Position numbers and translations under genes: made by a program
Source of the DNA: Pelomyxa schiedti
Lineage: Eukaryota > Protista > Evosea
DNA length: 64,000 nt
Direction: 5' to 3'
NCBI GenBank assembly: GCA_020536535.1
Contig: JAHLWZ010000835.1
Span: 1-64,000 of the forward strand
Notes under the pieces: generated by a model
What the model was told of the DNA's origin: nothing
Databases searched by the model: none
Seen by the model: only the letters and a program-made list of their open reading frames with translations
Shown here: positions 13,971 to 33,218 of the stretch, in pieces
Position numbering within the stretch: position 1 is the first letter of the stretch
How the letters are laid out: every line of letters begins with the position of its first letter

Positions 13971-15986
13971 TCAATTTACAGAGGTGTCTTCAAGTTCAAT
14001 CATGCGTGTGTGGGTTGCTTCTGTTTTTCGGAAGCCCTTGATGAAACCTATTGTGATTGTGACTACCGCAATCTGTTTTTTCTGTCAGTCAAAGATAATG
14101 TGTGGGGGAACTCACACAACAAGTTACACAAATCACTAGGATAGGGGAAATTCGTTCTGGTATTACTTTGTATTCCGCCAGAAGGTAAATTATAAATCCC
14201 ATGCAGGGTCCGCCAACCTCAATAGGAAATCAGGTACGAATTGTGTAATTTGGGTATACATTTCCAAGACCCAACGCAAATTCAAATAAGGCACCAGATG
14301 ACACGTCAACACTCCCCACCTCAAAACTGTAGCACAGTCCAGAGGAGTAAATTGTACTATACGTCAGCCCAAAAGCAATCAGGCCAGCTTCCACTAATAT
14401 AGATCCCGGAACTGAAAACTGTGTTAGTGCCAGTTTTATCATAGCGAATGTAATGAGGTGATTCATACCAATGTCTCCCGAAAATACTACAATAGAAATT
14501 ACAGCTACCTAAGTTCGGTGCATTAAAAAGAAGGAAGGGAACTGGAACATACAGCAAAGCTAACAGGTAGAGATATGGATGTGACAATTGGGGTCACAAG
14601 TGTCCTGTACCAAATCCGAGTAAAAAACAACGTTGTAAACCCAACAACACGAGTGAACATCCATGTGGCGCCCATAAGAGCTTGGAATTTAAATGGTATC
14701 TGGATCATAAACAGGTTGGGTAGCGTCAGTGAGTAATTGGGTACAAACTCCTATGTCGCCAAGAATTACTGGTAAGTATGGAGTCAATGAACACATCACA
14801 AGTGTCATCATTGGCAATTGAAATTTTACGATCGTGTTGCACCTCAGAGAGACCAAAGGTATATGAACCTAGGTTTTTGTCATCTACTACCTGTAACGCT
14901 TCGGAGGAAACCTTTTTGTGATCCTCTTTAATGTTGTGAGGAGCAGGATTGGAAGTGAACCAAAATAGCAAGCATAACGTCACCGCATGGATTCCAGCAA
15001 CTCCACAAAGTGTCTCCAATGCGTAGCGACTTATCATGGGGGTAATAGCGAAAACAGCTACAACGACAGCTGAACTCCAAGTCATGTTGTATATTCCAAC
15101 TGTCCACTCCAAAGGCTTATTGCGAGAAGTAGTGTCTTAAGGAAATGCCTAACGTCAGAGTACCACCAACGCGAAAAACGGAGGAACAAAACACAGAACT
15201 AGTAAAAGATATAACCCAAGAAAATACAAAGTGATAAATGGAAAAGCGTACAGCTTTCGCACGAAGGCCAGAGCATGCAACAAACAAATGAATAGGGAAT
15301 TGCGGTAAAGTAAATGGGAAGTCCGTATCTAACAATAGTTTTATGCTGACTTAAAAATGGTGAGGAAGTACCTTCTAGCAGCCTCTTGTCCGAAGGCTTT
15401 ATCACAAACGAGGGGTACACACACAATCATACCTACTTACTGTCAACTCTGGATGGTCAGAAGATAGGGCACCCACCACATAGGATCTGGGTGGCTGCAA
15501 ACATCTTTCTGGCAGTCATTCCATACGCGGCAAACTTTTTAAGAATTAAATTGCTTGCAAGAGGAGCAGCCATTGAAGTCAGTCCTAGTCCAATACCCAG
15601 AATATACAGCTGCATTGCATTGAATCCATAGAACTCTGTGGGAAGATGAGCATATGCACACTCCTCTGGATATGAAGGAGGGTCGTACCACTGGCGATGA
15701 AGTAAATGGCAGTCGTGAGAATGCAAGAGCCTGAAGCAACGAAGAACAAAAAAACCAGAATGAGAACCATGTTCACGGGCACGTGCTGCGCATCCGTAGG
15801 GTTGGAATTAAGTGTGCTTGGCACAACGCCAACACTGCCATCGCCACTTTTTCGTGCAGTATCGTTAATGCAGATCTCGGCATCAGACGGTGGTGACGAA
15901 GGTGTAGATCCAACGATAATGGCACCATTCGCACCGTGCGGAAAAAGATACTCCTCGTTAGCACTCAATCCCGGTCCCGTGGCCAT
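13971..15986 (-). CDS. Multi-pass membrane protein, probable solute transporter
   Basis: Two clusters of hydrophobic helices (e.g. MVLILVFLFFVASGSCIL, AVVVAVFAITP, LYLLALLYVPVPFLLF) separated by a hydrophilic loop at ~14750-14950. Multi-intron; family not assigned. Confidence 0.6.
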
Positions 15987-16331
15987 GGTGGGAACTTTTA
16001 TTGTACTACTCGCTTTGAGAGGAACAAGACGCCCGGTGCATCTTGCCCATTCTAGAAGCACGTAGAACGAATGATTATAATATCCGATTTCAAAGCCATC
16101 CAAATCAAAAACACTTGGACACAGATCTATGCACCATTCACTCCCCAATTCCTCTGATTGTTTCAGAGGGCAAAAACAAACCTCAGCTTTTGTTTGGGCT
16201 GAGTTTCTAACAAGGAGGTGTTGTTGAGGGAAATTTCGGCTTCTCACTTTTTTCCTCGAATCCAGTAGTTCCGCGACACAGAAATCTCCGTTCGAAGGGT
16301 TTTCAGTGAGAAAGGAAAATAAATAACCAAT

Positions 16332-19300
16332 ATGCAACGAGGCAGGCCACCGCCCGCTGTTTGGCGCACGCCGACTTTCGTCGGGTACAACATTATGGGT
16401 CTTAGACACCCTCGTTTTTTTTACTTATTTCAACGTCGCGTAGTCATTTTTATTATTACTTTTTTTTTTCCCCCTCTGCCGCTGCTGTGTCGCATAGATC
16501 TCGGCTGTTACTTATGCAACGAACTAATAATAAATAGACTGTTGTGTGACCCGTTTGTCGATGGGACCGGACTGAGTCGCGGCCAACACCCCTCAATGAC
16601 AATGAAGGCATTAAACGAAATGTTAATGGCACTGATCTCGTCTCCGCCTCGTGACTTACCCGTACCAGTGCGTTCCCCCCCCTTTTTTTTTAACTTACGT
16701 ATTACATTCCACTTTTCTCTTCTATATTGGTTTTAATATAAAAAAGGGAGCTGTGCAGCCAACAGCGAGTGTTGCCACACCAACTCAACCGTCAGGCTCC
16801 CCTGATTCGTCTTCTACAGCGGTCACACCACAAGGTGTATCTGTTGCAGTAGCCGCTGCCGCACCACCAGAACAGAGACCCTCTGAGAGACCTCTTTTTT
16901 CTCCAATAAGTTCTATCAAGATAAATCTTTCCAAGAGTTAATGGGATTTGGTAGATCTAACAATTCTGGGTGAAGTGAGAGAGATGCTGGCTTCTTGTGG
17001 TGAATACACATCCGCTCTTGCTTCTTGTACTAAGCCTGAACAAATTGCAAACTTCATTACCAGTATGAATATTGTGCATGTTTCTCTTGCTTGCTAATTT
17101 CATAAGTTTTGCGACGAAAAATTACCGCTCTTGGGGTTGGACAGATGCTTCTTGTACCAGGTGGATGGAATGGACTTACTTCAACTTCATGGTTAACACA
17201 TATCGTTGAAAGAACCAGTCCAACTCAGTCAGTCTTTTTTGTCTCTCTTACAGCTGATTACTTAAAGATTTGCATTCATCACTTGCAATGCGGGATTAGG
17301 ACTTGAGTATCACCCCAGTATGCCACGAGACAGCGCCAAGATGCTTTATAAAACGTGTTTACGCATCGAGAGAATACCTCAAGAACGCATAACGGATGCA
17401 GCATTCTGGTCTCTTCTTCTGTCACTTTGGACAACGGAGTCAGAATACAATCGTGTAGAGGTAGTCGTTATGAGTGCTGCGCTCAGGCATTACCACTAAA
17501 ATCTAGATAATTTATGATGCCCTTCTACCTTGGCTTGCTGGGGGTAGGAACAGCCTTGGTGAAGCTAGAAATGGTGAAAGATTGTTATCACAAGCTTTCA
17601 TTGAAACTTATTCCGACCCTGCTGCTGATTGGCGGAGTCCCCAGTGCTCTAACACTTCTGCAACCAAGTAATAATACGAAGCCTAAGTCTACGTGTTCTC
17701 ATTTATACCCATAGGAGTGTTGTTGAAGCTATGAGATATGTACTAAGGAAGAGGGGGATGTCCAGAGACCAGACAAAACAATTGATCTTCTGTTTAAGGC
17801 GGTCTTTTGTACAAAAAGCAGGGAAAGATTTATTCAAAGAACAAAGTGGAAGGTTCACACTCACCATCAACATACTCTATTTTCTTAGCTTTCCTACAGC
17901 TGGTCAGAGGAATTAATACTGCGAGCTTCCCTCTGCGGACTTACAGAGGGTTCAAGAAACCCTTCACGTGGTGCACCCCTTCCAGTGGTCGATGTTAAAG
18001 TACTTACAATGGGATGCCTCCATCTATGCTATGTTGCAGCGAAAGAGAGTGAGGCTGGACGAATTTCAAATCTGGTTTTTCTTTTTCTCCCCTCCCTTCT
18101 TCCCCTCTTCTTAACTAGTATTCTTAGATGTTACGCCGAGTCAAAGAATGTGTTGAAGTTGTGCAAGCCATGGTTTCTGCATCCCCACAACAAGAAGGTC
18201 TTGATGGACTTCCCCCTGTACTGAAGGCAGAAATGTGTTCTCCTAACAAGGGGTAAGACAATGATTGCACCCGTAACCAGTCATTAACCTTTACAAGGTT
18301 TTTGGGCTTTCATTTACTTACTGAGACAAATGTTGACAAATACATTGGTGAACAATTTACTCCTACACCGCCACCAAACACAGATATTCTTTCCATTCCT
18401 CCGTTGGTTGAAAGGTAAGAAATTGATCTTCTTAAATGCACTCAAATACATGAAGTGCTGCCCAGGCACTGAGTGCAGTAGAGCAATGTATTCTAATATG
18501 TGATGAACTATTGGCCCGTTCACAGGACTCATCCACCTCAAGTCGCCTGTCAATCCACTTGCAGGTCCCTTGTTTTCCTTTCCTCTCTTTACTTTCATAC
18601 TCAACTTGTATCATATGTAGGTTATTTGTATCATAACACAACTTTTTACGGAGGTGCTTCCTCTGCCTCAAACTTTTGATAAGCCGTGTATATATAGAGA
18701 TAGGTCGTGGCTCACAAATTCCTTGTCTTTACCCTGACATTATTGGTAGACATTTCTTCTCCAGGGGTGCACAGCTGAACTTTCTTGAGAAGTTGTATAA
18801 ACTCACTTACACATATGCCTCAATTTGGCAATCAGTAGAACGCCCTACACGCAGTGCTGATTCACAACGTGCTCTTGTAGCAGGCTGCATCATCTGCATT
18901 TTTGATGCTGTTTTACGTTTTGTGGCTGAACACAATCCCCTCGATGTCTCTGTTCTTATGGCTGAGGACGGTGGCTATATGCAGCACCTTGGTGTTTGCA
19001 CCAATAATAGATCTTTTGAAGAAGTATGTGCAACAATGGAGTTGGTTAATCCAGTGCATGCAACTACCAGAAATGCTATGCTTTCTTACCTGAATTTCCT
19101 GAAGTTGACAACGTCAAATCAGTTATTTGCCTACAGGCATCCCGACAAAATAGAAATTAAGAAATATGGGGGAACAGTAACCTTCATGTGCAAACTTCTT
19201 GAACGAAGCAATACTGAAATTCACAGTGGGGGAAGTTCTGAAATGCAATCACTTATGAATTGGCTTCTTGGAAGTGAAATTACTTCCAAGCACCCAGAGT

Positions 19301-22300
19301 TCGCCCTTTGGAGAGGTTTGTTATTACCCTCCTCACTTTTCACAAATCTCTAACACCAAGCACACAGATATGGCATTACTTTTCAAGTTTCTTGCTACAA
19401 TGGATACTCTCGAAATGGAGCAACTTCGAATGAGGCAAGCTTTACGGCAAAATCAAAGTTTCCACATATCATTTGAAGATGCTGGAGGAAGGAGAGGTGG
19501 AAGTGGTTGGAATGTACAAGCTGAACCAATAAAATGGGAAGTTGTGAACTACAGAGGTGTTGATATTGATACCGCTGACGTCAAAGCAATAGCCTTCGGA
19601 ACTCGGGAGATTAACTTTGGTGAAGGTATTAATGTCTTCCTTTGAAGGTAGTTTTTAATTGTTTGATTTTCCTTAGGGCCGGTTGTACAGAGCCCAGCCG
19701 ATGTTGCAAAAATTCTTCGTGTACCTCTTCCCACAGAGGATGATGTCTTACATACTGATGATTTACCAACTTTTGGGGATACACTCAGCAGGGAGGAAAG
19801 TGAGCTGCTTATGTCTTATCTAACTGTTGATTATATGCGCATTCCACTTGTCCTTGGATTTTTCGCTTCTCGTGATCGAGTCATGTACTTGTATAATCCC
19901 CAGCTGCGTGACATGCTTCGTGCTGTCATTTTTGAACCGGGCCCATGGGTTCCCCAAGTTGACCATGAAGCCATATCCCAAGTCCCTGCCCGTCTCAGTG
20001 CTTTGCAAAGCAAACAAAATATTTTAAAGCGGCTTATGTCCGCAACGGCCCCAAAGGATATCAACACGCTTGGTACACCTGATGGCCTACTGTTAAATGA
20101 GTTACGTTACGCATGCTCTGCTTCGTTAGACCCTCTGTTATCCATGTTGCACGTCATAACTGACTTGGCAGATGCATCCCTGCGTTCTACTGACGCCGGG
20201 TTCATTCTTTTTATGATGCAACTTGCAATAGATGTGGACCACTATATAACCTATGTCATCTCAACCTCTTCAATGATTAACGCAAGCCATCCCCTCCCAC
20301 CCGCGGCAATTGCCTCCCTTGAGATGTACCACAAACGGTTGCACGATATGTTGATGGGTACTTGCAAGGGAATCCTCGCACACTGGAACTCAGAAGCCGA
20401 CGCAGACACTGATATTGAAAGTGCTTGTGTAGTGCGAGCTTACATTGCTCTGCTTTACTCTTCGCTGCGACCAAATGAATTGACTTTGGATGTTATCGTT
20501 GACTTCCTTGGAAGCATCGCCTATGTTAGGTTATATATCAGCCCTCATTTGCCTTTTGAACTAAATCGGCACACAGAAACTGGCATGGCTTTGGAATGGG
20601 ACAAAATAGGTCCGATCTTTTATGGGCATCAACTGATGGCGGGTCTGACCCAGAAGCTAGAATGATGCGGTTTCTTCAAGCATATGGGATTGACACAACA
20701 AAAATGGATCGAACAGTAGTTGACCAATTCTTGAAAGACCCCAGCAGGGCTGTTTTCTTGCACATTGATAACAGGGTAATTAGGGCTCCAAGGATTGTGA
20801 AAATCAAAGAGCCAGGAACCGAGGGTGAAGGAATTGATATTGAAAAGCTTCCTCCTGCAGATGTACCTGAGGAGAGACTCTTCAGTTTACTGCAGATACA
20901 CCGCAGGAGGTTAGTTGCATGGCTGGAAGCTGCTCCGACAGGAACTGTTGATTTAGCACTACAACATGTAGTAAGACTAGCCCTCAAGAATCCCCAATTT
21001 GAGTACAGTGGCTGGACACATTCCGGCCGAGGTAAATTTGAAGCTTCTAGGGCAGAAATTTCTTTTGATGCTCAAATGGCTGAATTTCTTTGGAGGAATG
21101 ACGAACTTCGACCCGTTCCTGACAGTATGACACAATTCTCCGATTTTGAAACTCTCTTTGGCAGAGAGGCCCTCCACTGTGGCATGGTTGCACGCAGCAA
21201 TCATCGATTGTGGGTTCACATTGTGGGAACAGACTATGACTTACAACAGTGGGATGTGGCAGGCACTGGTGACCAGGGCACAGGGTGCCCTATGCCGGCC
21301 TCGGGGATTGCTTCTGATGTCTGCGAGATATGTGGGCGCACAGGTCGCTGCTGGAAGTGTCCTACATGCACTGTGTCCAACTGTGGCACAAGTATGGATC
21401 CTGGTACACCGTGTTCTGTGTGTGGTACCCCCAAGTCTGGTGGGTCTAGCTCCCAGAATGAGAATGAGAATGAGACATCTGAGGGAGGTGACGAGGAAGA
21501 AGAAATTCCTCATCTTCCTCCAATTCGTTACAATTCCGTGTTATACAATAGGGTGTGGGATCACACCACTGCTGCTCAGCCCCCACCTGAAACCCCTCCA
21601 ACTGAGCAGTGGTTTGGTTTCGTACTTGCTCCCATTCTTCGAACACTTGGTCCCATTCGCTACGAGTTCCTCCTCCCACAAGAAATACTCTCTCGCGAAG
21701 CTCGGTTCGCTCACCTTTTGTGTTGTCCCAACTATGGAAAACCACAGGCCACTTGGAAGGAAATAACCATAAGCCGTAATACTGGAGGTATTTATGTTTA
21801 CAATTTGCAAGACTGGGGAAGGCGGTTATACCGATCACTCGTATACTCTTCAAAATGCAGTCTGAGCCTTCACAGTATGGCACCAGAAGCTATTGCACGT
21901 GCACAGGCTGGAGTACCTGAAAGCGCTTGTACAGCAGCTGGAAATTGGAAACAAGGAAGAAAAGTAGGTGAGTCTCTGGTGATTACCAGAAGGAATACCA
22001 AGCTTGGTGGAAGAGAAACGTACATACCTCCTCGCCTATTACAAGTAAGAATCTTTCCCATTCTAAAAAACTCCTCAATTTTTATTAAGGGTGTAGTACC
22101 TGGTGCCCTACTGGAAGCGTATCATATGTGGCAGGGTGAAGATAGTGTCATTCGCGGGGAGCCAATTGATCCCCAGTCTCAGTGGTTCGGCTATAGTGTC
22201 GAAATTACCATCAACAATGATAAAACTGCAAAAATTATTCGGAGGACTGCAGGTTCCTACACCCCAATCAAAACAAATGCCCCGATCTTTGCGTCATCGC

Positions 22301-25300
22301 TTCTACGTTATACCCGAACTGTGAACACCACAACCAACAATGGTCTGACACAATTGATGAACATGGGGTTTTCTGCCGCCGTTTGCAAGCTAGCACTTAG
22401 GCACTGCTCAAATAACACTGAAGCGGCAGCTGCTTGGCTGCTAGACGATAGCAACATGATGGAGATTGCGGGCGCAATGTCCACAGACGACCGTCCATCC
22501 ACACAACAAGGATTACTGCCTCTATTGGAAGAAGAAGGCTTTGGACACAACTCCAGTGTTTATGCCATGAACCTCTTTGGAGGTGATTTGGCTCACGCAA
22601 GGTCATGGTTGCTGGATGACTGCAATAAAGAAGTCATAGCGTCCCTGGAAACAACCCAAAAGCCCAAGCTTGCGTCAGAACCTGTTGCTGCCAGCCCAAC
22701 AACACAACCACAAGCAGTGAGTAGAGTAGGAGAATTGGAGCTGTTCAATCTCTTGGATTCTGAACCTGGAACTATGCTCCACCGATTAGTGCAATTACTT
22801 TCCAGGATTGAAGACGCATCACACATCCTTGTTTGGGGTGTCCCAGGTGACTTGCGGCAGTCTGCCCGAACAGACCGTAACTTCGTGAAAATATCTGCAG
22901 TGGAACTTCCACGAATAAAAGTGAAGTTCCAGCCTATGCAAGACGACGATGGTGTTGTGCGCCTATTTTTACTTGATCATGCTGGGTGGTTTGTAAGTGA
23001 TACCGCCACTGAAGGCCATATGGCAGGGTCAGGCTTCATTCAAAAGTTATTAGGAGGCATAGAAAATTGTCTTCTTCTAGAAAATCAATGCCGAGGTACA
23101 TTGTCTTTCATTGTATGAATAATGGTAACTTTTGTGTCAGAATTCCGAGTAATGGTTGCCAATCATGACTTGTATCGCCCACAAATATTCGGTCGCCCCT
23201 TCTCTACTCGACTTGTGTGCGACAGGGGTTCACTTGGTTGGACTGGAGTAATGGATATGAGATACTTCCTATATCCAGTTCACACAAGCAAAACTTTCCT
23301 TCTCACACCGTCCTTAAGCTCCCTTCTTTACCTTATTCTTCTCCGCGTTCTGAACAGGGAGTATGCCACAGCATTCCGTCTGATAGAAGGCTGTTATGTT
23401 GATACCACTTTTACTGCGGATGAAAGGTGGATCTTCTCGCAATTCGAAAGGACCATGGATGACCGGCACCCTGATGCTCACGCCATACGATTAAAGCTGT
23501 CTCTTGCTATTATGCATAGTGATAATCGGGTGCCATGGGAAGTTCACCAAGAGATGGATAAATACTTATCCAAGCTTGATCACGTATCCAGTGGGTGCAA
23601 GATTATACCTGAAGAAGAAATCGATCTCATGCTCCATTGCAAGCAAGCAACGGCTAGGCTACGCAACAGACTGGAGTTCCTAACAGCAATGCTAAGGCAC
23701 CGAAATTCTGCTGACCCCTCAGCTTTACCCCCTACAGTGACTCTAAAACCAGAACCTCCGAAGGTTGGTGGACAACCTTGGCTGAAAATGTCAACTTTGA
23801 CACCAATGTACCTTGACCACCATGGCCAACGTTTAACAAATTTAAAGTTCAAACTCCCAAGAGGTCTTCGGGTTCTTAGTGACGAGGCCCTTATTTCCAT
23901 GATATGGAAGCAAGATATTATGATTGACCAAGAAAGTGGCACCAACAAAAATCTTGGGTTTTTGTTCTTGTACGAGATTCTACGTGGCCAAATAAATATT
24001 CGTTTCAAAGGAGACGAAATATCACAGTCATTTGGTGAGTTGTACTCCCGCTGCTTCCACTTGAAGCTGTCAAGATGGGGAAGGGAAACTGTGGAAGAGG
24101 GAGAAGTTGAGAGCAGTTCTTCAGCTCAAATGGCAGCCCTGGCTGCTCTAAGCTGGGGAAAGTTATCTACTGACCCGAATGTATCATTGCCTCAAGTACC
24201 CGTGGATGACCGTACAACACACATGCTTGGTGAAGGCATCAATATATATAGTGCTGCGGCACGTGGTACCCCAATTAAAACATTTATGGAACGTCTGTAC
24301 AGTGACCTTACAAACGTGCTTGTTTCCAAGAGGGCCATACAAGATTCTACCCAAGCTGCACTTGGCATTGTTAGAACCAGTATATTAACCAGCAACACTC
24401 TGCGGGTTCCTGCAAACCCCCCTCCACCAGTGATATCAGCACTTCTGGATACCTCATGCAGTGTTCGCACTCTCCACACTTCCTCGTTCACTGGCACAGA
24501 TCTTTCTTGTTTTGCCTCTGCTCCCCTAGGTTTACCCCAACTGCAGGAGTATGTACTTCTGAGTGAAACACCCGAGACTGCCCTTGCTTCCCTTCCTTTC
24601 GACCTTACTTTTCATGGAACGTCACACACAGTTGTGGCTCAAGATATTTTGAAGAGAATGAATGATGATACGGTATTGTACGCAGCTGGAACCAGCAAGC
24701 AACGCACTCCGTACATTATACATATGTCTCCACTGGAAATTGAGCAGTTTGTTGCAAATCCAAGAATCCCGAACTTTGCGCAAGCCATTGAATCACTTAA
24801 CTCACTCATTGCAAAATTACACGCTCTTCAACAGGCGGATTCCAATATAGTGGAGCGCACAATAACTGAAATTATCCAAGCAGCGAACAATGTTGTGCTT
24901 GATGCCTCTGGGGAAATGACTGAAGAGCAGGCAAGGCGTTACAGGTTTGTAATGCGCCGTACTGCAGGGTACTTGCAACAAATCAACATGCTGTTTGCCT
25001 CTGCAACTTTGCTTTCCCAGCATGCAGAAGAGGATTTACGGCAACTGAATCCTTACATTGAGGCACCAGACCATATTTTGGATAAAGTTTCCTCTGTCAT
25101 GCTTTACTGTTCTCGTGTGAGCCAAGCAAATCGAGCAATTATGCAAGCAACGTCTTTACGAACTTTGATGCAGCATATTTCCAAACGCAGACCAGGATTT
25201 TTCACATCGGGTTCTAATGCAAACCTTCTCACACGTTCCTTCATGACTGGGCCCGACCCAGTGGTGGTGGAGCGCATCAACAACTTTGCTTCAACACTTG

Positions 25301-26411
25301 CTGAGACTCTCTTGTGCCGTCGCTTCTTTATTTCCAATGAGGATTCTGAAACCCACAATAGAACAGTGGATCCACGTTTCATGGTGTTCGAATATCTCTT
25401 TGATTTCATTCTGAGACGAAGACAAGTAGAAATGGTTCAGTCATTCATTGCCAAAGCACGTGCTGGTGACTCCAGTGTACAACAAATGATTATGGGTGCA
25501 GGAAAAACAACAGTCGTTGGTCCTTTGCTATGCCTGATCCTTGCAGACGGTGACACTTTAGTGTCACAAGTTATGCCAACAGCCTTATTGGAACAAACTC
25601 GTAACGTACTGCGCAGCTGCTTCAACACGATTGTAGTAAAGCATGTGTTTACTTTGCAGTTCGAACGTGGCGTGGATGACAGTAGAGAGCTTGTTTCAAC
25701 TCTATTTTCCAAGTTGGATCGCACTCGTAAACAACGCGGAGTTATCTGTGCCTCCCCGGAATCCATTAAGTCTTTGATGTTGAAATTTGTAGAACAGCTT
25801 CATGCCATTGAACAAGTCAATATAAACAGCTTGACCCCAACAGGCTCCCAAAGGACTACAGTTGAATCTGTACGCATGCGTGACCAGCTCCTAGCACGCA
25901 GCGATATGGCAGATGAACTGGTCAAGATTCTTGATATGTGGAAGCGTGGGGTTCTTATAATGGATGAAGTTGATGTACTACTCCATCCCCTGAGATCTGA
26001 GCTCAATTTCCCCATTGGACATAAGGACGCCATTGACATGTCTGGCCATCGCTGGGATTTGCCAATTCACCTCATTGATGCAATCTTCTTTGCAACCACT
26101 GGCCGTAGTTCTTGTGACGTACAGACTTTCTCAAAACAAGCAGCTGCACTCAAAGTCGATCCTGCTGCTCTCCTCAAAAGCATATCCGTTGCAGTTTCTC
26201 AAGGATTTGACGCACACAAAATGCAACACCAACCGCACCTTGTTCTTTTGGACCAGGATTGGTACCATGGCTCTCTAAAGCCACTTTTGGCTCAATGGGC
26301 ATTGTTATGGCTATATGACCGATTTGTTGGTGCTGTCACTGTTCCTAGTGAAATACTTTACAGTTACATAACTGGTGAAAATCCTGACACCCATAGAACA
26401 AAAGTATCAAC

Positions 26412-26443
<32 letters not shown>

Positions 26444-29400
26444 ATCTTAATTCTTAATCCTCACTCTGATTTTTCACAGATCGAAGAGGGTCTTTTGCCG
26501 GAATCGAAAAAGCTCCTTAATTTGACTAGAAATTGGCTTCTTCACCTGTTCCCTCATGTCCTCGCTAAGATAAATCGAGTAACTTTTGGCTTGTTGACTC
26601 CAGCAGACATGTTAAATATCGATCCTCGTACCCCCCAAAGTAGACTTCTGATGGCGGTATGCGTTTCCTCATCTAAACTTTACTAATTTTCTGCGTAAAA
26701 CAGGTGCCGTTCGTTGGTAAGGACGTGCCATCACGTTCATCCGAATTTGCTCACCCCGACGCTGTTATTGGCTTGACGATTTTGGCATATAGATATGAAG
26801 GCGTTAGGCAAAGTGACCTTATGCGCGTGATGTCACAATTGAAACAAGACTTTGCACGGCAGGTTGGTCCCCGGGAGCAGAGACCCGCCAGTACAATGTT
26901 CAAAAATTGGCTTGCACTTGCCAGGGAAACCGCTTCTGCAGCTGTTGTTGCTGCCTCTTCATCAATTCTTCCTCTGGCACTTTTCCAGCCAAATGATCCC
27001 AAGCAAATGACACAGGTAGTCTTCATTTTTTTACTTTTTATTAATTAGTCAACCTAGCTCTATGCCCTTGTAAGAAGGCTGCCGCAACTAATACATTATT
27101 ATCTCTGTCAACATGTCTTCCCAGCTTGCATGAACTTCCAACTACTGAAAGTATGAACAGTAAAATGCTGTATTGCCTCCAGCTTATTGCCCTTCACAGG
27201 TCAGTGCTTGTGGGCATGAGCTTGGTAGCAATTTGTTGTTTGGAAGACGCATTGGCTTCTCAGGGACACCTTCGAATCTTCTTCCACTGGATCTTGGAGA
27301 GTGTCAATACGAGCCTGGATCTGATGGAAAGATCCTTAATGTTCTTACATCTCCAAATGTCGTCTCTGCATCTTTGAAAACTGTGAACTCCTTTAACCAA
27401 TAAAATGTAAATGTAACACCACTGTAAGGATTGGACGGCAAAAAGCCTGCTCCGTGACATTTGTCAGGCAGATCCTCCCTTCCTTGCCCTTATTGACACA
27501 GGCGCCCTAATCACTGGAATGGACAATGAAGAAGTTGCACATTTCATGCTGCAATTGTTGCCTGGTTAGAATTTGTGTTTTCTCATTCCCTGTTTCTTAC
27601 CACATTCACAAGACTGGATGGAGGGCTTCGTTTACCTTGACAGAGCTGATAGGCAAATGGTATTACTTCGCTCTGGGCAATCAGTCAAGCTTTCTGAGTG
27701 TGGAATCAGTCCAAGTAGGAGGTTCACATTTTATGATCAGGTTTGATGTTACTACTCTACATTGTTCTTCTCTAAAGTAGGGAAAAACAGGTTCACACTA
27801 CAGGAATGGATATTAAACAAGCGTCAAATGCAAGAGCAGTTGTGACTATAGGAAAGGATATGACATTTAGGGACTATGCCCAAGGGTGCTATCGAATGCG
27901 AGGTTGGAAAAATATCAGATTATTAAACGGAAATGCGGACTCATTATTGATAAAAGGAATTGGAAAGGGCATGTGCATTCATGTGTTTGTCATCCAGGAA
28001 GTACTCAACAAACTTGCTCAAGATTTAGGCACCCATCAGTAAGAAATTTACCCTTGTATCTCTTCTTACCCAAGGCAAGGACGAACCGACCCGAATTGGA
28101 TATTCCTGCATGGCTCCTTCTGAATTCTATGCGAATGGAGAGCCTCCAGTTTGTCAAGATGGGACAACAAGTAATTTACTTCCATCCAGTTATTCCACCA
28201 GTAGGGACTCATTATACCGAAAAGGAACTGCAAAATATTTTCCGGAAAAAAGCTCTTTCCACTCTTTTGGATGAATCAAGGGCACACTACTCTGAGGCTC
28301 CAATGTACAGATTACGTAGATTCCACGATGCCCCACCACCATTAAATGAGTTTTTGCGCACATGTGTCCAACATTTCCGAGAGGTTTTTTCCTACTCATA
28401 GTTTTTTACCTGACATCTTTCTTAAAAATCAGGTTATTGACTACACGATTGAGAATGCAGTTCCGAAGCCACACAGGTACATTGAGAAGATTCAAGAAGA
28501 TGTTGTGAAGCAAGAACCGCTTTCCATTGAAGCCCCCTCCAGGGATAGAGTCAATTCCGTTCTTAAGAATTTGGGGCAGGTTGGAGCTTACAAAACAACA
28601 AGCCGGTAGTTAATCGGTATCAAAGGTAACTGCACAACAAGAAAGTGAAAGGATGGGACCCACAGAATCTGACCTTGGGCTAAATGCAGAAGTTGTCCAT
28701 GAGCAAGAAGCGCAAGCACAGGAAGAGGCAGAAGAAGAAGCAGAAGAAGAACAACAGAAGATCAGTGCTTTCACTCGGGATGACGAAAGCCACATCCCTT
28801 GGAACGGTACTTGTGCAACATTAATGGCCCAGGCTCTCACCCCAAAATAAATGCAGCCTCTCTTCTCACTGAGATTCCTAGTGGGGAGCTCAAGGGTGGG
28901 GAACCTTTTTACAAGTTTAAACATTTCCACGTACGTGAACAACAACCAAAATTAAAATTCCCGGAGAGCATGATGCTCTCAGACAATTTCTTCCGGCCAA
29001 GGTATGAAACTTCCCTCTTAGTTGGGAATTGAATAACAATGTTATCAGATGGGTTGGTGTTGGTGATAGGCGGCTTAAAAATGTTGCCGTTTTCCTTGAG
29101 TGGGCACCAGTGATGTCATCTGAAATTGCCCGTGTGCGCACACCCCTCTTGATGAAACAAATAAGTACAGGTTGTGGCAATACAAGTTGCAAGACTCCGA
29201 CTTGTAGATCAAATCCACAGTATGCCACCATTTTTTGTAGTTTCGCCTCTCAAATATCCAAAGAATGAAGCCACTGGACCCCTCAGATACTCCCGCTAAA
29301 TTAGCTGTGCAATTAGCACTCCAAACATCCGCTGTGGCTGATCCCAAACGTCATCTTCCTCTTTTCTGCCCCTCCACAATCGAGGCAATGATTCAACCAG

Positions 29401-30853
29401 AGTTCTCAACTTCTCTGGCCAAAACATCCAACAGGTACTTGTCCCACTGTCCTTGTGGGATTTAGGTAAATCCTTGGCAGGTTTGTGGTGGCATTATCCC
29501 TTGCCGAAGCAGAGACAATCAGAAAGATAATCCATAGTGAACAAACGCTTATCACAAAAGCTGCACTTGCTTTGCATACAATAGATGGACTCTTGATGGA
29601 CAACACACCAAATTATATACCGGAGGCATGCCTACTTTTTGCACAAATTATCACACTTACATCTATTTTTTCTTAGCTATCTGGTGAGCTTGGACTCGTA
29701 GGGATGGCGTTGCAGAGTCTCCGTTTCTTCAACTGTGAGATGTACTTCTCTGATGAAGGTAGATTCATTTTTCATTTCTGTGCTCCATGTAATGTGGTAA
29801 AAGAGTTGGACGCTCTGGAGCACTCACTTGCCGCTTCTGGACTCACCGACCGCCTTCAATTCTTCACGGAATGTTTGAGGTGCCATTATTTGTGACTGCA
29901 ATCTGTTTGCTTACATTCGTAGGTTGCGGAGACGGCAGCGCAATTTGTGGGGAGATACACCCCTTGCTAAGTTCTTCTCACCTCGTGAAGAGTGGAAGAA
30001 TTTGCGGGCTCGCGCGATTGCGGAACAAATTTCTATTGTATTTCCGAAATCCATGTCTCTATTATTTATATACTTTGTTCGCAGGCAATCAAGGCCGCGT
30101 TGCATGATAAGAAGCAACACCTAGACCCCTACCAAATGTTTGAGCACTTTGATGACGACCATGACGGCAAACTAAGCTACGCTCAGGTGGCCCTTTCAGA
30201 AATATGTTCGTAACCTCAATTTACTCACGTTTTGCCCCTGTAGCTCGATCACCTGTTTGATTGGATGAGACTTGGTTTTGCACCTGGTGACTATCACGAG
30301 ATTGTCAAAATTCTAGATACTGCCAACACTGGGACCGTCTCCCAGAGGGATTTCATAACCACTTTCGGAATTCCCTCGCACGACGAAGTTCTAGCCATCG
30401 AAGCTGTGAGCTACCCCTTGATCCATTAATAAATTCCACTCACTCCCTCCCAGGAGAAACAGATCAACAACGTTCCTGCCGAACCCAAACAAACGGGCCG
30501 ATGGCGTTGCAGCAACTGCACATACATGAATTCACCACTGGTATGCATCCATTCCCTCAACACACAAACAAAAAAAAAAAAGCAAAATCCAATCATCCAC
30601 ACGCAGCACAACACAGAGCTACGCACTCTTCTCTATCTTCCCAACACAACACAACACTCACCACCATGTCCCACAGGAAACAACTTGCTGCATGTGTGAA
30701 GTTGGCTGGTCAGGAGAGCGAGAGTGCCCAAGGGACAAGTGGATGTGCCCCCCTGAGCGCGGCGGGTGCACATTCTTCAACCCAGTCTCCCAATTCTACT
30801 GCGAAATGTGCAACAGGGCGCGCCCTGACCTCATTTCGCACAGGTTGGTGTGA
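16332..30853 (+). CDS. Giant (~4,000 aa, estimate) DUF3638/DUF3645 SF2/SecA-like ATPase with NZF, 2xUBA, AZUL-like, EF-hand and C-terminal NZF modules
   Basis: Continuous spliced frame. WKCPTCTVSNC..CSVCGTPK (~21350-21435); UBA LMNMGFS..AAAAWLL (~22350-22445) and EEEGFG..ARSWLL; Walker A QMIMGAGKTT (~25483-25512); DEVD (~25963); DUF3645-type AVPFVGKDVPSRSSEFAHPD; GFSGTP, TGMDIK and QGCYRMRGIG; QISTGCGNTSCKTPTCRSNP; EF-hands FDDDHDGKLS and LDTANTGTVS; WRCSNCTYMN..CCMC and WMC..CTFFN..CEMC; stop TGA 30851-30853. Start uncertain (16332 or 16596). Confidence 0.88.
26414..26443. repeat. Poly-C tract (C30) inside an intron of the giant gene
   Basis: Lies between donor GTATCA (26404) and acceptor ..CACAG (26479). 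The poly-Pro in the ORF track is an artefact of this intron. Confidence 0.85.
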
Positions 30854-31004
30854 GCAGGTCCACGTAGTTGTACCAAAACGATGGGTTCTATGCTATTTTG
30901 CTATTACTAGATGACTAATTTTCCCCGAGCGGCTTTTGTCGACAAATAACAAACAAAACCTAAGATTCAAAAAAGTGGTGAAGATTAAGTTAATTGCGAC
31001 ACGG

Positions 31005-33218
31005 ATGTCGTTGGACGCCAACACGCAGCCGGAAATGCGACAGCAGGAGAAAGAGGAGAAGAAGGTAGGGAACGACGAGGCAGCTGCAACCACAGTAGTC
31101 ACGACGCCCGTCAAAAAGAAATCTGCTGCAACGTCACCAGCGTCCACTGGCTCGAAGAAGACGGAAAGTTTGGCTTCTCGTTTGAGACCGCGGCGACCTG
31201 CGAGGAAGTTTTACGCTGAGGAGAGCTGGGAGGAGGAAAAGAAGGCCAAGAGGGCAAAGAAGGCGAGGAAGTCCCGATCCAACAAGGAAAAGAAGAAAAA
31301 AGGAGGGGGGGAGAAAGCACCAAGAAAGGACTCTGGTTCGAAGGCCTCACCCAAATCGTCTGGTGCGTCGAAACACTCTGAGAAGCAAATTGTTATTACC
31401 GTTTCAGATAGTGATAGAAGTGAGTCTGAGGAGGAGGAGGAAGAGGCACCAGGTGGTGCCAGTGGGGTGTCATCAAGTGAAGTTGATAAATCAAGCCAAT
31501 CTTCCAGTACTAGTCCTGTGAAAGATGGGAAGGATGCTGCGAGTACTAGCCCTGTGAAAGATGTGAGTGATCCAGTGGATGCTCCCACTTCCCAACGTGA
31601 CAATTATATGAACCTAGCAATCAGGTTGTGTAGTGACTTGGAATAAAATTACTTCCATTAACCTCCAGCGACAGAAGTCTGTCAGGAAAAGTAGGGACAA
31701 TTTCTAATATGAGCATGTTTCAAAAGCGTACACTCCCTCTCTATGTAATACTCATATTTAGATTACATAATTATTCTTTCTTTTACAGATTATATCGTGC
31801 CGTTTTATTCAGCATTATCAAAGGTTACCTCTCCTTCCATTTTTTGGTCTTCTTATTACTTTTAAGGAAGAAAAATCAAAGGAAATATGTCGCACCTGGC
31901 AGGAGGCTGGATATGAGAGACTGAAAGATTTCCTTTTCGTACTACGGGACAAGGGGTGTATCCTAAAAAATAACCGTGCAATACTTGAGAATCAGTCAAA
32001 ACCTCAACTCTAAAGAAGACATATCACTCAAGCATAACTGTGTGCGCGTTATTTTCGATGGTTCCAATCACCTTGCTGAAGATGAAGATGAAGATGAAGA
32101 TGCCGCAGGTATCTTAAATTCCTCACAACTTCGAGGAGTAAGAAAATTACAGAAGATCGACAATTGCCAATAAAGAGACCGCCTGACACAGACGCCTCTC
32201 AACTTGCGGAGCCCCCTCAGAGCAAAAAACCCGAAGTTGATGAGGCTTCAAAACCCACAGCAGTGGCAACAAGCCCAGTGTCAAAAGGCGATGAAAAGTG
32301 TGGTGAGTAGTCTGCCTTAACTATATGGAAAACTCAAGTGCAAAAAGAAGTACCCAAACCCGAAGCCGTGGTGAAAGTGAAAGGTTCTAGTACACGTTGG
32401 TTCTGTAAATTTCTAAGCAGTAATCAGAAAAAATCACATGCCCAGTGTGCAATCATGAGCTGTCAGATTCCCCACCAGACCAACGAATCGTTCATATTAA
32501 CGAGTGCCTTGATCGCCAAGAACGCAGGGAAAGAAAAGTTCGTTGTCCTTCCTGTAGCACTGTTTACCCCGCTTTCGAGCTTGGAGTGCATTTTCTCTCT
32601 CATCAACTCGGTTCCCCAATGGGTGCAGCCGAGCCTCGCTCCTGGACAATGCCGGTCATGCTGAACATGTCCTGCCCTTTGTGCCCGGGAAATGTGTGCC
32701 AGACCTTTTCTTTTTTTTAATACAACAACCTAATCCTTGCTTTCCCACAGGCGCCAGAGGTTGACTTGCTACTTCATTTTCAGGCAGTTCACAGGCACCA
32801 CCTCTTTTGGCTCCTAAGAAAAACTTGTAATTCTACTTTAGAAACTTGTTGACATCTGAGACAATTACTCTTTACGACACCTATGTCCGGCGATGCTTCG
32901 AAAATAATTCGACCAACCCAAAGACTGAATACCTTGGTACATGTAACCATTTTCGGGCTTTTCCGTTTCACCCATGAACAGTGGTGGTACTTACAAAGGA
33001 GACGAGCAGCAAGGCAGGGGAATGCTCCATTTGCTGTGAAGATTTTTGTGAAGGTTCTTTTTCCACATCTCCTCATTCTTCTTTAACCAGTACAAAAAAA
33101 AAATGTAGGTCAAGAAGCAGCAAGGCTGCAGTGCCTGTGCTTATTTCACAAGCACTGCATTGAACAATGGTTCACCAAGCCAACTGGTGCTGGTTGCCCT
33201 GTCCACAACAAAGTGTGA
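31005..33218 (+). CDS. RING-H2 E3 ubiquitin ligase (ZNRF-like RING) with UBZ4-like and two C2H2 fingers and a Lys/Ser-rich N-terminus
   Basis: CPVCNHELSD..RIVHINECLD (UBZ4-like), CPSC..HFLSH, CPLC..HFQAVH, and terminal ECSICCEDF..ARLQCLCLFHKHCIEQWF..CPVH*. Confidence 0.82.

What the first reader, a model, noticed from the sequence alone, without database searches (positions are those of the whole stretch)
16332..30853. Giant SecA-like SF2 ATPase carrying ubiquitin-, proteasome- and Ca2+-binding modules
Seen: one spliced ~4,000-aa frame with an intact-looking ATPase core (QMIMGAGKTT, DEVD, GFSGTP, TGMDI, QGCYRMR), three RanBP2/NZF-type fingers, two UBA domains, an AZUL-like finger and two EF-hands. 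Known: DUF3638/DUF3645 proteins are largely uncharacterised; these motifs parallel SecA (EMxTGEGKT, DExD, GMTGT, RGTDI), which moves polypeptides; NZF and UBA bind ubiquitin. Inference: an ATP-driven, possibly Ca2+-regulated segregase or translocase for ubiquitinated substrates that hands them to the proteasome, i.e. a non-AAA analogue of p97 or RNF213.
Basis: partly seen in the sequence, partly recalled or inferred. Interest (0 to 1): 0.85.

Follow-up and report, generated by a model that had tools for sequence, protein, structure and literature searches.

The report
Giant ubiquitin-reading ATPase with SecA-like motor
This is a real, expressed amoeba gene for a roughly 4,090-residue protein. 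It belongs to an unstudied family found across eukaryotes and combines a motor shaped most like the bacterial protein-export ATPase SecA with ubiquitin-binding modules and an N-terminal domain otherwise seen only in Legionella effectors.

Summary
Window 16332-30853 (+) is one gene of Pelomyxa schiedti, with 37 annotated exons plus about 4-6 unannotated 5' exons. GenBank holds it as KAH3756032.1, "nxn protein", 3,898 aa, which is N-terminally truncated and misnamed. RNA contigs confirm at least 15 splice joints, and single-transcript orthologues of 4,000-5,000 aa align along the whole length.

- **Motifs and modules:** all five ATPase motifs are present, as are DUF3638/DUF3645, two tandem UBA domains, two TF-type NZF fingers and a third weak one, an AZUL finger and an EF-hand pair.
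- **Motor:** an AlphaFold model of the core (pLDDT 89) matches SecA best, at Z 17.5 against 14-15 for helicases. Like SecA it has a large insertion between motifs II and III and a long helix after the second RecA domain. No SecA sequence signal was found.
the N-terminal ~340 aa match the catalytic region of Legionella effectors LegA15/AnkH and AnkD (Z 17.4). That region has been described both as protease-like and as an atypical GTPase.

The proposed ubiquitin-directed protein-remodelling function remains an inference. The EF-hand loops are degenerate, and AZUL occurs in only 3 of 120 orthologues. The family is catalogued but uncharacterised. Other agents of this scan noted different SecA-like giant proteins elsewhere in this genome.

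The parts
16332..30853 (+). Whole coding region of one gene, about 41-43 exons and about 4,090 codons. The GenBank model KAH3756032.1 covers 17320-30853.
16332..16384 (+). Exon 1 with the start ATG, followed by intron 16385-16537. The GenBank model lacks it.
   Evidence: It matches orthologue N-termini, and the intron was recovered with 9 of 10 orthologues.
16332..18074 (+). Exons of the N-terminal LegA15/AnkH/AnkD-like domain. They include LLVPGGWNG (17148-17174), CNAGLGLEYHPS (17284-17319) and SEYNRVE (17440-17460). Exon bounds between 16640 and 17062 are uncertain.
   Evidence: Alignments A2 and A3. The orthologue model matches 7xql/7kj6/7ew8/6mca over residues 2-344 at Z 15.5-17.4.
18128..22335 (+). 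Conserved scaffold, helical-repeat-like where it was modelled. It contains many invariant residues but no recognised domain.
21352..21423 (+). Internal RanBP2/NZF-like finger (WKCPTC...CSVC). It is weak and has no TF motif.
   Evidence: Pfam 19 bits, E 8e-4. Weak profile hits to the TAB2 and HOIL-1L NZF fingers. Coordinates.
22336..22461 (+). UBA domain 1, with the MGF motif.
   Evidence: Pfam UBA_7 at 36.6-41 bits.
22501..22629 (+). UBA domain 2, divergent.
   Evidence: Family HMM E 5.7e-4, sequence pattern, and a tandem-UBA match to NUB1 and USP13.
25258..28484 (+). SF2 ATPase core with SecA-like architecture (P0159 residues 2440-3330), spread over 12 exons.
   Evidence: Model pLDDT 89, pTM 0.87. 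SecA is the best match.
25360..26082 (+). DUF3638, the first RecA domain up to the stem of the insertion. Walker A lies at 25483-25512 and Walker B (DEVD) within 25957-25983.
26404..26479 (+). Intron holding a run of 30 C (26414-26443).
   Evidence: No listed RNA contig bridges it. The junction is supported by homology and by high model confidence across it.
26704..26778 (+). DUF3645, a conserved motif inside the domain inserted between motifs II and III.
27254..27271 (+). Motif III, GFSGTP.
27800..27901 (+). Motif V (TGMDI) and motif VI (QGCYRMR).
29170..29378 (+). AZUL zinc finger (C-x4-C-x4-C-x39-C), split by intron 29220-29263.
   Evidence: Pfam 40.6 bits against a cut-off of 23.8. Cys pattern shared with P0155 and P0157.
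29626..29676 (+). GC-AG intron of 51 nt. It removes an in-frame stop codon.
   Evidence: RNA joint in two runs; sequence.
30130..30357 (+). EF-hand pair, split by intron 30187-30243. Loops lie at 30148-30186 and 30313-30351, and both are non-canonical.
   Evidence: Pfam EF-hand_7 at 33.8 bits; loops read.
30502..30697 (+). NZF finger (WRCSNCTYMN...CCMC, TY motif), split by intron 30541-30676.
   Evidence: An RNA contig spans the intron.
30740..30811 (+). NZF finger (WMC...CTFFN...CEMC, TF motif).

Best explanation
**Shown.** The locus encodes the Pelomyxa schiedti orthologue of a giant (4,000-5,000 aa) protein found across eukaryotes and defined by DUF3638/DUF3645. From N to C terminus it contains:
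1. an alpha/beta domain with the fold of the catalytic region of Legionella effectors LegA15/AnkH and AnkD
2. about 2,000 residues of conserved, largely helical scaffold carrying a weak NZF-like finger and two tandem UBA domains
3. an SF2 ATPase with all catalytic motifs, whose predicted architecture is closest to SecA: two RecA domains, a 310-residue domain inserted between motifs II and III, and a long helix after the second RecA domain
4. a tail with an AZUL finger, a degenerate EF-hand pair and two TF-type NZF fingers

**Inferred.** The protein is a cytosolic, ATP-driven machine that works on proteins rather than nucleic acids. It would recognise ubiquitin-marked clients through UBA and NZF and use the SecA-like motor to pull, unfold or extract them. 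The N-terminal domain would act as a second catalytic or nucleotide-controlled module. AZUL, and in other lineages thioredoxin-like or ubiquitin domains, would be lineage-specific add-ons.
For: - **Gene and expression:**
- **Family:** 3,889 relatives at E <= 0.001, and full-length orthologues in oomycetes, kinetoplastids, euglenids, dinoflagellates, labyrinthulids, Thecamonas and Monosiga. All segments are 30-60% identical end to end.
- **Motor:** motifs are invariant in 57 orthologues. The model has pLDDT 89. SecA is the top match by Foldseek (E 7.7e-7), by VIA on Foldseek's matches (Z 17.6, up to 542 residues aligned, against 15.3 for DbpA) and by an exhaustive search of 48,161 chains (Z 17.5 and 17.1, against 14.1 for the best non-SecA chain and 14.4 for the isolated SecA motor).
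- **Accessory domains:** among 120 orthologues, 76 carry thioredoxin-like, 58 UBA, 35 RanBP2 finger, 21 EF-hand, 3 ubiquitin and 3 AZUL domains. None has an RNA- or DNA-binding domain.
- **Ubiquitin readers:** the tandem UBAs match NUB1, USP5, USP13 and Rad23. The NZF fingers carry the TF/TY plus Met signature (the role of that signature is established knowledge from Npl4, TAB2 and TRABID).
- **N-terminal domain:** Z 17.4 to LegA15, with 268-272 residues aligned; the next unrelated hit scores 9.7. The ESM Atlas lists a T4SS_AnkD cluster among its matches.
Against: - There is no biochemical evidence for any family member, and no paper in the library treats DUF3638/DUF3645 functionally.
- The margin of SecA over helicases is only 2-3.4 Z units.
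- No SecA sequence signal was found.
- Motif Ia (PTALLEQ), motif III (TGTP-like) and weak ResIII/DEAD Pfam hits fit nucleic-acid translocases equally well.
- About 1,500 residues (P0159 1070-2440 apart from the fingers and UBAs) were neither folded nor matched to anything, so a further enzymatic domain may be hidden there.
- The EF-hand loops are degenerate.
- The 5' exons have no RNA support yet.
Confidence: 0.42

Rival explanations
1. The core is a nucleic-acid-dependent SF2 translocase or helicase, an RNA or DNA surveillance or remodelling enzyme. Ubiquitin binding would only recruit or regulate it, as happens in some repair and antiviral helicases.
For: The fold is generic SF2. DEAD-box proteins, RIG-I-like helicases, DinG, FANCM and INO80 all score Z 13-15. 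ResIII and DEAD give weak Pfam hits. Motif Ia (PTALLEQ) and motif III (GFSGTP) resemble DEAD-box, Snf2 and type I restriction motifs; this last comparison rests on my own knowledge and is a lead, not a test.
Against: SecA ranks first in every structural search. None of 120 orthologues has an RNA- or DNA-binding accessory domain. The large insertion between motifs II and III and the post-motor helix are features of SecA.
Confidence: 0.25
2. The protein is chiefly a hydrolase: a deubiquitinase or ubiquitin-like protease, as the automatic UniRef name 'ubiquitinyl hydrolase 1' implies, or a LegA15-type GTPase. The N-terminal domain would be the effector and the ATPase would feed or gate it.
For: The N-terminal domain matches AnkH/LegA15/AnkD at Z 15.5-17.4. 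The AnkH domain was described as clan-CE (XopD/Ulp1)-like with a His-Asp-Cys triad (PMC6712400). LegA15 binds and hydrolyses GTP, and its C361S mutant is inactive (PMC9757750). The family keeps invariant His, Asp, Lys, Arg and Glu residues. UniRef uses this name for many orthologues.
Against: No Cys is invariant: the best candidate is Cys in 33 of 49 sequences, and none stands at the expected nucleophile site. No protease activity was detected for AnkH in vitro. Pfam finds no deubiquitinase domain in any orthologue. The UniRef name is automatic. I could not make a residue-level structural alignment to LegA15.
Confidence: 0.13
3. The ATPase is a conformational switch in a very large scaffold or signalling hub, for example a redox- and ubiquitin-linked stress sensor. 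It would not be a processive motor.
For: About 2,000 residues are helical-repeat-like scaffold. Thioredoxin-like domains occur in 76 of 120 orthologues and EF-hands in 21.
Against: All catalytic motifs, including the arginine-rich motif VI, are invariant, which argues for real hydrolysis. The thioredoxin-like domain is absent here.
Confidence: 0.15
4. The frame is an artefact that joins several neighbouring genes.
For: The listed RNA contigs do not bridge 26403-26480, and none were laid on the region upstream of 25300.
Against: Collinear single-transcript orthologues. The GenBank model fits with an exact codon count. The fold is confident across exon junctions.
Confidence: 0.02

Closest known systems
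SecA, the bacterial preprotein translocase ATPase (for example 2fsf, 5eul, 4uaq)
   Same: It is the best structural match, at Z 17.1-17.6 with 408-542 residues aligned. Both have a DEAD-like two-RecA motor, a DEVD Walker B, a large domain inserted between motifs II and III, and a long helix directly after the second RecA domain.
   Different: No sequence-level similarity was detected: Pfam SecA_DEAD, SecA_PP_bind and P-loop_SecA all fail to hit. The inserted domain is twice as large and mostly helical. This is a eukaryotic, cytosolic protein of about 4,090 aa with ubiquitin readers. No SecY partner is implied, and a two-helix finger was not identified.
DEAD-box, RIG-I-like, DinG and Snf2 SF2 helicases or translocases
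   Same: Two RecA domains and motifs I-VI, with Z 13-15. ResIII and DEAD give weak Pfam hits.
   Different: They score lower than SecA, and only about 330 residues (the bare motor) align. This family has no nucleic-acid-binding accessory domains.
Legionella effectors LegA15/AnkH (7kj6, 7xql, 6mca) and AnkD/LegA3 (7ew8)
   Same: The N-terminal ~340 residues share the fold of the effectors' protease-like domain plus cap domain (Z 15.5-17.4, rmsd about 4 A, 13-15% identity).
   Different: There are no ankyrin repeats. No sequence-level match was found. The catalytic Cys is not conserved. Here the domain sits at the head of a giant eukaryotic protein.
p97/Cdc48 and RNF213 (ubiquitin-linked giant or ring ATPases)
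   Same: ATPase activity combined with ubiquitin-binding adaptors.
   Different: Those are AAA+ proteins, with hexameric rings or dynein-like arrays, whereas this is an SF2 motor. No E3 module was found. There is no evidence of unfolding activity.
Giant GTPase / SecA-like / vWA proteins of the same genome (earlier scan notes), and the ankyrin-SecA open reading frame on contig C730
   Same: They are giant cytosolic proteins of Pelomyxa with SecA-type motors.
   Different: Those hit Pfam SecA_DEAD directly (up to 150 bits). The DUF3638 core does not, and profile comparison with them is not significant.
Ubiquitin readers: tandem UBAs of NUB1, USP5, USP13 and Rad23; NZF fingers of Npl4, TAB2 and TRABID; the AZUL finger of UBE3A
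   Same: Profile matches at E 2e-9 to 1e-4 for the UBAs. The NZF fingers have the Cys4 plus TF/TY plus Met pattern. The AZUL finger scores 40.6 bits and has a Cys4 pattern.
   Different: The context is entirely different. Binding was not tested, and the one complex prediction gave no answer.

Membership tests
DUF3638/DUF3645 giant proteins (Pfam PF12340 + PF12359) | Both Pfam models score above their curated cut-offs, in this order. | tested here: met
   108-113 bits against 31, and 50-53 bits against 25.
DUF3638/DUF3645 giant proteins (Pfam PF12340 + PF12359) | End-to-end collinearity with 4,000-5,000 aa orthologues. | tested here: met
SF2 ATPase | Walker A, Walker B (DExD), motif III, motif V and motif VI arginines are present and conserved. 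| tested here: met
SF2 ATPase | Two tandem RecA-like domains. | tested here: met
   Model; about 330 residues align to DEAD-box cores.
SecA | Sequence match to SecA_DEAD, SecA_PP_bind or P-loop_SecA. | tested here: not met
   No hit at E <= 10 in 10 orthologue cores. The locus is absent from the genome's SecA_DEAD hits. hhalign probability is 3-8%.
SecA | Overall architecture: motor plus a domain inserted between motifs II and III plus a long scaffold helix. | tested here: met
   The position of SecA's inserted domain comes from established knowledge.
SecA | Two-helix finger, helical wing domain, and coupling to a SecY channel. | tested here: inconclusive
   Up to 542 residues align to SecA in SecY complexes, but the tools give no residue-level alignment. 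A channel partner is not testable here.
Clan CE cysteine protease / deubiquitinase ('ubiquitinyl hydrolase 1' label) | Conserved His-Asp-Cys triad with a Gln before the Cys. | tested here: not met
   His and Asp are invariant, but no Cys is. Residues at the candidate nucleophile positions are Ser, Gln or variable. The mapping is by order and spacing only.
LegA15-type atypical GTPase | Fold of the LegA15 C-terminal region. | tested here: met
   Z 17.4, 268-272 residues aligned.
LegA15-type atypical GTPase | GTP-binding Arg, Gln, Lys and Arg residues and the catalytic Cys. | not testable with these tools
   This needs a residue-level structural alignment to 7xql. Invariant Lys and Arg residues exist, but their equivalence is unknown.
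UBA domain | Pfam score above the cut-off, and the MGF/LL signature. | tested here: met
   First copy 36.6 bits. Second copy found only by the family HMM and pattern. The family profile matches solved tandem UBAs.
Ubiquitin-binding NZF finger | W-x-C-x2-C ... C-x2-C with a TF/TY dipeptide and a hydrophobic residue before the last Cys. | tested here: met
   Both C-terminal fingers meet it, with a Pfam score of 26.6 against 27. The internal finger lacks TF and does not meet it.
AZUL finger | Pfam score above the cut-off, and four Cys ligands. | tested here: met
   40.6 bits against 23.8; C-x4-C-x4-C-x39-C. Binding to a proteasome subunit was not tested.
Ca2+-binding EF-hand | Canonical 12-residue loop with ligands at positions 1, 3, 5 and 12 (Glu at 12). 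| tested here: not met
   The pair scores 33.8 bits. However, loop 1 ends in Gln, and loop 2 has Ala at position 3, Thr at 5 and Asp at 12.
Nucleoredoxin (GenBank name 'nxn protein') | A thioredoxin-like domain. | tested here: not met
   No thioredoxin-family Pfam hit in P0159 at E <= 0.1. No tblastn match to the thioredoxin part of orthologues.

The most novel reading that the evidence does not exclude
The DUF3638/DUF3645 giants would be an ancient class of eukaryotic ubiquitin-directed polypeptide motors, built on a SecA-type architecture rather than an AAA+ ring. The motor would be coupled to an N-terminal enzyme of the AnkH/LegA15 type. Legionella's conserved effectors AnkH/LegA15 and AnkD would have captured their catalytic domain from this host family.
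Probability: 0.15. Interest if true: 0.85.

Novelty: new member of a known kind. Interest (0 to 1): 0.6.

Why it matters
The family is one of the largest conserved eukaryotic proteins with no known function. It is present in trypanosomes, Leishmania, oomycete plant pathogens, dinoflagellates and choanoflagellates, and databases label it only by automatic or misleading names.

Two structural links found here give concrete, testable handles. The first is a SecA-like motor joined to ubiquitin readers. The second is an N-terminal domain shared with the Legionella effectors AnkH/LegA15 and AnkD.

If the motor acts on ubiquitylated proteins, it would be a non-AAA route for protein extraction or unfolding. 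If the effector domain comes from this family, that would explain what those effectors imitate in their amoeba hosts.

Tried and rejected
- **VTD deubiquitinases.** I recalled that this family might be the viral-tegument-like deubiquitinases. PMC9741609 does not describe it, so I rejected the idea.
- **PDB sequence and profile searches.** The ATPase exon, core profile A1, N-terminal profile A2 and middle profile A6 gave nothing meaningful, only designed helical proteins.
- **hhalign of the core profile.** Compared against the ankyrin-SecA open reading frame and against a 3-sequence alignment of this genome's SecA-like motors, only the Walker A or Walker B regions aligned, at 3-8% probability. 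This is inconclusive.
- **Pfam at E <= 10 on 10 cores.** No SecA families appeared.
- **Word-indexed search with N-terminal profile A2.** It found only fragments of the same family, and no bacterial effector.
- **ESM Atlas feature searches.** The N-terminal domain and P0159 900-1460 gave no usable hit.
- **Complex prediction.** Pelomyxa ubiquitin with the C-terminal NZF pair and zinc returned 'no answer', with a score of 0.00. This is not evidence either way.
- **Apparent ubiquitin-like exons at 15509-15853.** They appeared in one spliced alignment, but the translation does not look like ubiquitin, so I treated them as spurious.
- **Pfam PF28177 (T4SS_AnkD).** It is not in the local library.
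- **Literature searches by orthologue accession.** Nothing was found.
- **Flanking open reading frames.** 15585-16409 (-) and 30936-31646 (+) have no Pfam match.
- **Joined coding sequence.** I never assembled a joined coding sequence or sent one to a search tool. A script joined pairs of adjacent exon cores transiently, only to screen candidate introns for in-frame stops. The unannotated 5' exons were handled exon by exon. For whole-protein work I used the database protein P0159 and its orthologues.

Full report
**What is there**

The window comes from the anaerobic amoeba Pelomyxa schiedti. The best full-length database hit to the locus is GenBank KAH3756032.1, "nxn protein [Pelomyxa schiedti]", 3,898 aa (P0159). 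It maps to the window at 17320-30850.

I wrote a protein-to-genome spliced aligner in run_python and recovered the annotated structure with it. There are 37 exons, separated by 40-76 nt GT-AG introns plus one of 136 nt. Their lengths sum to exactly 3,898 codons once two further introns are included:
- 22045-22089, annotated and GTAAG...AG in sequence
- 29626-29676, a GC-AG intron that removes an in-frame stop

Single-cell RNA-seq contigs from one study confirm 15 listed joints between 26657 and 30453, including the GC-AG intron. One contig links 30242-30405, 30454-30540 and 30676-30910, so the transcript runs past the TGA at 30851-30853. None of the listed contigs bridges intron 26404-26479, which holds 30 consecutive C. 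That junction rests on homology and on confident folding across it.

**The 5' end**

The GenBank model starts at an internal Met (17320). Orthologues align further upstream:
- exon 1, 16332-16384 (MQRGRPPPAVWRTPTFVG)
- exon 2, from 16538 (LLCDPFVDGTGL...)
- an exon ending at 17062
- 17107-17227 (…LLVPGGWNG…)
- 17268-17460 (…CNAGLGLEYHPS…)

Intron 16385-16537 was recovered with 9 of 10 orthologues, and 17228-17267 and 17461-17506 with 10 of 10. Exon bounds between 16640 and 17062 remain uncertain, and I had no read call left to test them.

I never assembled a joined coding sequence or sent one to a search tool. One script joined pairs of adjacent exon cores transiently, only to screen candidate introns for in-frame stops. 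The unannotated exons were aligned and searched one by one, and whole-protein work used the database protein and its orthologues.

**The family**

An exhaustive HMMER search with the 1,112-aa exon found 3,889 relatives at E <= 0.001. Full-length orthologues of 3,900-5,000 aa occur in many lineages:
- oomycetes
- Trypanosoma and Leishmania
- Bodo
- euglenids (single Trinity transcripts)
- dinoflagellates
- Hondaea
- Thecamonas
- Monosiga

Every segment of the protein is 30-60% identical across these orthologues. UniRef names them "ubiquitinyl hydrolase 1" automatically, and some records say "NXN protein". DUF3638 was found in none of 14 control prokaryote genomes, and it occurs at three loci in this genome. 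The paper library holds no functional study of DUF3638 or DUF3645.

- All five ATPase motifs are present at the stated kind of positions and are invariant in 57 orthologues.
- Pfam supports DUF3638, DUF3645, one UBA, AZUL and an EF-hand pair above their cut-offs. Two C-terminal RanBP2/NZF fingers fall 0.4 bit under the cut-off, and an internal finger scores 19 bits.
- The second UBA is real but divergent. A family HMM finds it at 22501-22629 (E 5.7e-4). Its sequence repeats the L..L...GF...WLLDD pattern of the first copy. The family profile matches the tandem UBAs of NUB1 and USP13 over both copies.
- Both C-terminal fingers carry the TF or TY dipeptide and a Met before the last Cys, the ubiquitin-binding NZF signature (established knowledge from Npl4, TAB2 and TRABID).
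- The AZUL finger has four Cys (C-x4-C-x4-C-x39-C), a pattern shared with its two closest relatives.
- The EF-hand loops are not canonical. Loop 1 (DDDHDGKLSYAQ) ends in Gln instead of Glu, and loop 2 (DTANTGTVSQRD) has Ala at position 3 and Thr at position 5. Ca2+ binding is therefore doubtful.

Among 120 orthologues, the precomputed Pfam domains show the following:

| Domain | Orthologues carrying it (of 120) |
|---|---|
| Thioredoxin-like | 76 |
| UBA | 58 |
| RanBP2 finger | 35 |
| EF-hand | 21 |
| N-terminal ubiquitin | 3 |
| AZUL | 3 |

No orthologue has a nucleic-acid-binding domain. The three with AZUL are this protein and two close relatives. This gene has no thioredoxin-like domain, so "nxn" is a misnomer here.

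**The motor**

I folded P0159 2440-3330 with a 57-sequence alignment and obtained pLDDT 89.1 and pTM 0.87. SecA came first in every structural search:

| Search | SecA result | Best non-SecA result |
|---|---|---|
| Foldseek against the PDB | Eight best matches are SecA or SecA2 (E 7.7e-7 to 4e-5; TM up to 0.46) | DdmDE (9ixm), DinG, then MDA5/LGP2 and Dicer-2, from E 4.2e-5 |
| VIA-align on Foldseek's matches | Top 20 entries all SecA, Z 15.5-17.6, 396-542 aligned | DbpA, Z 15.3, 328 aligned |
| Exhaustive VIA-align over 48,161 representatives | Z 17.5 and 17.1; isolated SecA motor 14.4 | FANCM, Z 14.1 |

The excess over helicases thus comes from parts outside the two RecA domains. In the model:
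- Walker B is at residues 236-239.
- A long strand (249-258) leads into a 310-residue, mostly helical domain (259-570) that contains DUF3645.
- A return strand (571-579) precedes motif III (595-600).
- A 47-residue helix (794-840) follows the second RecA domain.

SecA has its preprotein cross-linking domain between motifs II and III and its scaffold helix in the same places (established knowledge).

Against descent from SecA, no sequence method sees a relationship:
- Pfam at E <= 10 shows only weak ResIII and DEAD hits.
- SecA_DEAD hits five other places in this genome but not this locus.
- Profile comparison with those true SecA-like motors aligns only the Walker regions.

I therefore call the core SecA-like in architecture but not a member of the SecA family.

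**The N-terminal domain**

I folded residues 1-1200 of the Hondaea orthologue with 49 sequences and obtained pLDDT 83.5. Residues 2-344 match the C-terminal region of LegA15/AnkH (7xql, 7kj6, 6mca) and AnkD (7ew8). The scores are Z 15.5-17.4 with 258-286 residues aligned and 9-15% identity. The next hits, at Z <= 9.7, are helical repeats aligned to residues about 800-1176. The ESM Atlas search also returned a T4SS_AnkD cluster.

Two papers describe that region differently:
- In AnkH it is called a clan-CE-like cysteine protease domain with a cap, with triad His243, Asp258 and Cys324. No protease activity was detected in vitro (PMC6712400).
- In LegA15 it binds and hydrolyses GTP, and the C361S mutant is inactive (PMC9757750).

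In our family His, Asp, Lys, Arg, Glu and Tyr residues are invariant, but no Cys is. By spacing alone, the triad positions might be Trp/Glu/Ser. That is my inference and was not tested. The window encodes the conserved motifs of this domain. A sequence search found no bacterial relative, so the link is structural only.

**Mechanism**

*Shown:*
- the locus is one expressed gene
- an SF2 ATPase has intact, conserved catalytic motifs and a SecA-like architecture
- the ubiquitin-reader domains are of recognised types
- a LegA15/AnkH-like N-terminal domain is present

*Inferred:* the machine works on ubiquitin-marked proteins, using ATP to pull or unfold them. I give this about 0.4.

*Rivals:*
- a nucleic-acid translocase recruited by ubiquitin (0.25)
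- a switch-type ATPase in a scaffold (0.15)
- a hydrolase-centred enzyme (0.13)
- several genes wrongly joined (0.02)

Hand-off to the proteasome rests only on AZUL, which is lineage-specific. Ca2+ control rests on degenerate loops.

**Limits**

- About 1,400 residues (P0159 1070-2440, apart from the fingers and UBAs) were not folded and match nothing.
- The tools give no residue-level structural alignments.
- The RNA evidence consists of contigs, not reads, and covers only 25300-31250.

**Verdict**

The gene is a new member, with AZUL gained and the thioredoxin-like domain absent, of a catalogued but uncharacterised family. The SecA-like architecture and the link to Legionella effectors are the points worth following.

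Noticed in passing
G000 contig C730, locus L006:60-9983 (+): An intron-less 3,307-aa open reading frame. It has about 1,000 residues of ankyrin repeats followed by a genuine SecA motor (SecA_DEAD 144 bits, SecA_PP_bind 32 bits, P-loop_SecA 104 bits). Its GC content is like that of the host. It could be an amoeba gene, a symbiont or virus gene, or a transfer.
   Followed up: partly
G000 C808:123637-123888 (-), C262:8605-8781 (+), C1034:7035-7280 (-): Three more long open frames (1,400-2,400 aa) with TGEGKS Walker A motifs that hit SecA_DEAD. They appear to be the GTPase / SecA-like / vWA giants that other agents of this scan described.
   Followed up: partly
window 16332-17319: The GenBank model KAH3756032.1 starts at an internal Met (17320) and misses about 190 N-terminal residues, which is half of a conserved domain. 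Its name 'nxn protein' is inherited from orthologues with a thioredoxin-like domain, which this gene lacks.
   Followed up: yes
orthologue P0169 residues 2-344; window 16332-18074: The catalytic region of the Legionella effectors AnkH/LegA15 and AnkD has a structural counterpart at the head of a giant protein found across eukaryotes, including in amoebae. This hints that the effectors copied a host domain.
   Followed up: partly
window 26414-26443: A run of 30 C inside intron 26404-26479. Public DNA and RNA contigs break there.
   Followed up: partly
window 29626-29676: A GC-AG intron of 51 nt, confirmed by RNA contigs in two runs, among otherwise GT-AG introns of 40-76 nt.
   Followed up: yes
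G000 C601:27512-28648 (+) and C225:8977-9693 (-): Two further DUF3638 genes in the same genome, lying in open frames of 1,321 and 2,375 aa.
   Followed up: no
G000, many contigs (for example C711:61483-63291, C106:13713-15724, C202): More than 150 matches to the ubiquitin domain, many of them in head-to-tail polyubiquitin arrays.
   Followed up: no
window 15585-16409 (-): A 274-aa open frame antisense to the gene's first exon and promoter region. It has no Pfam match and is probably not a gene.
   Followed up: partly
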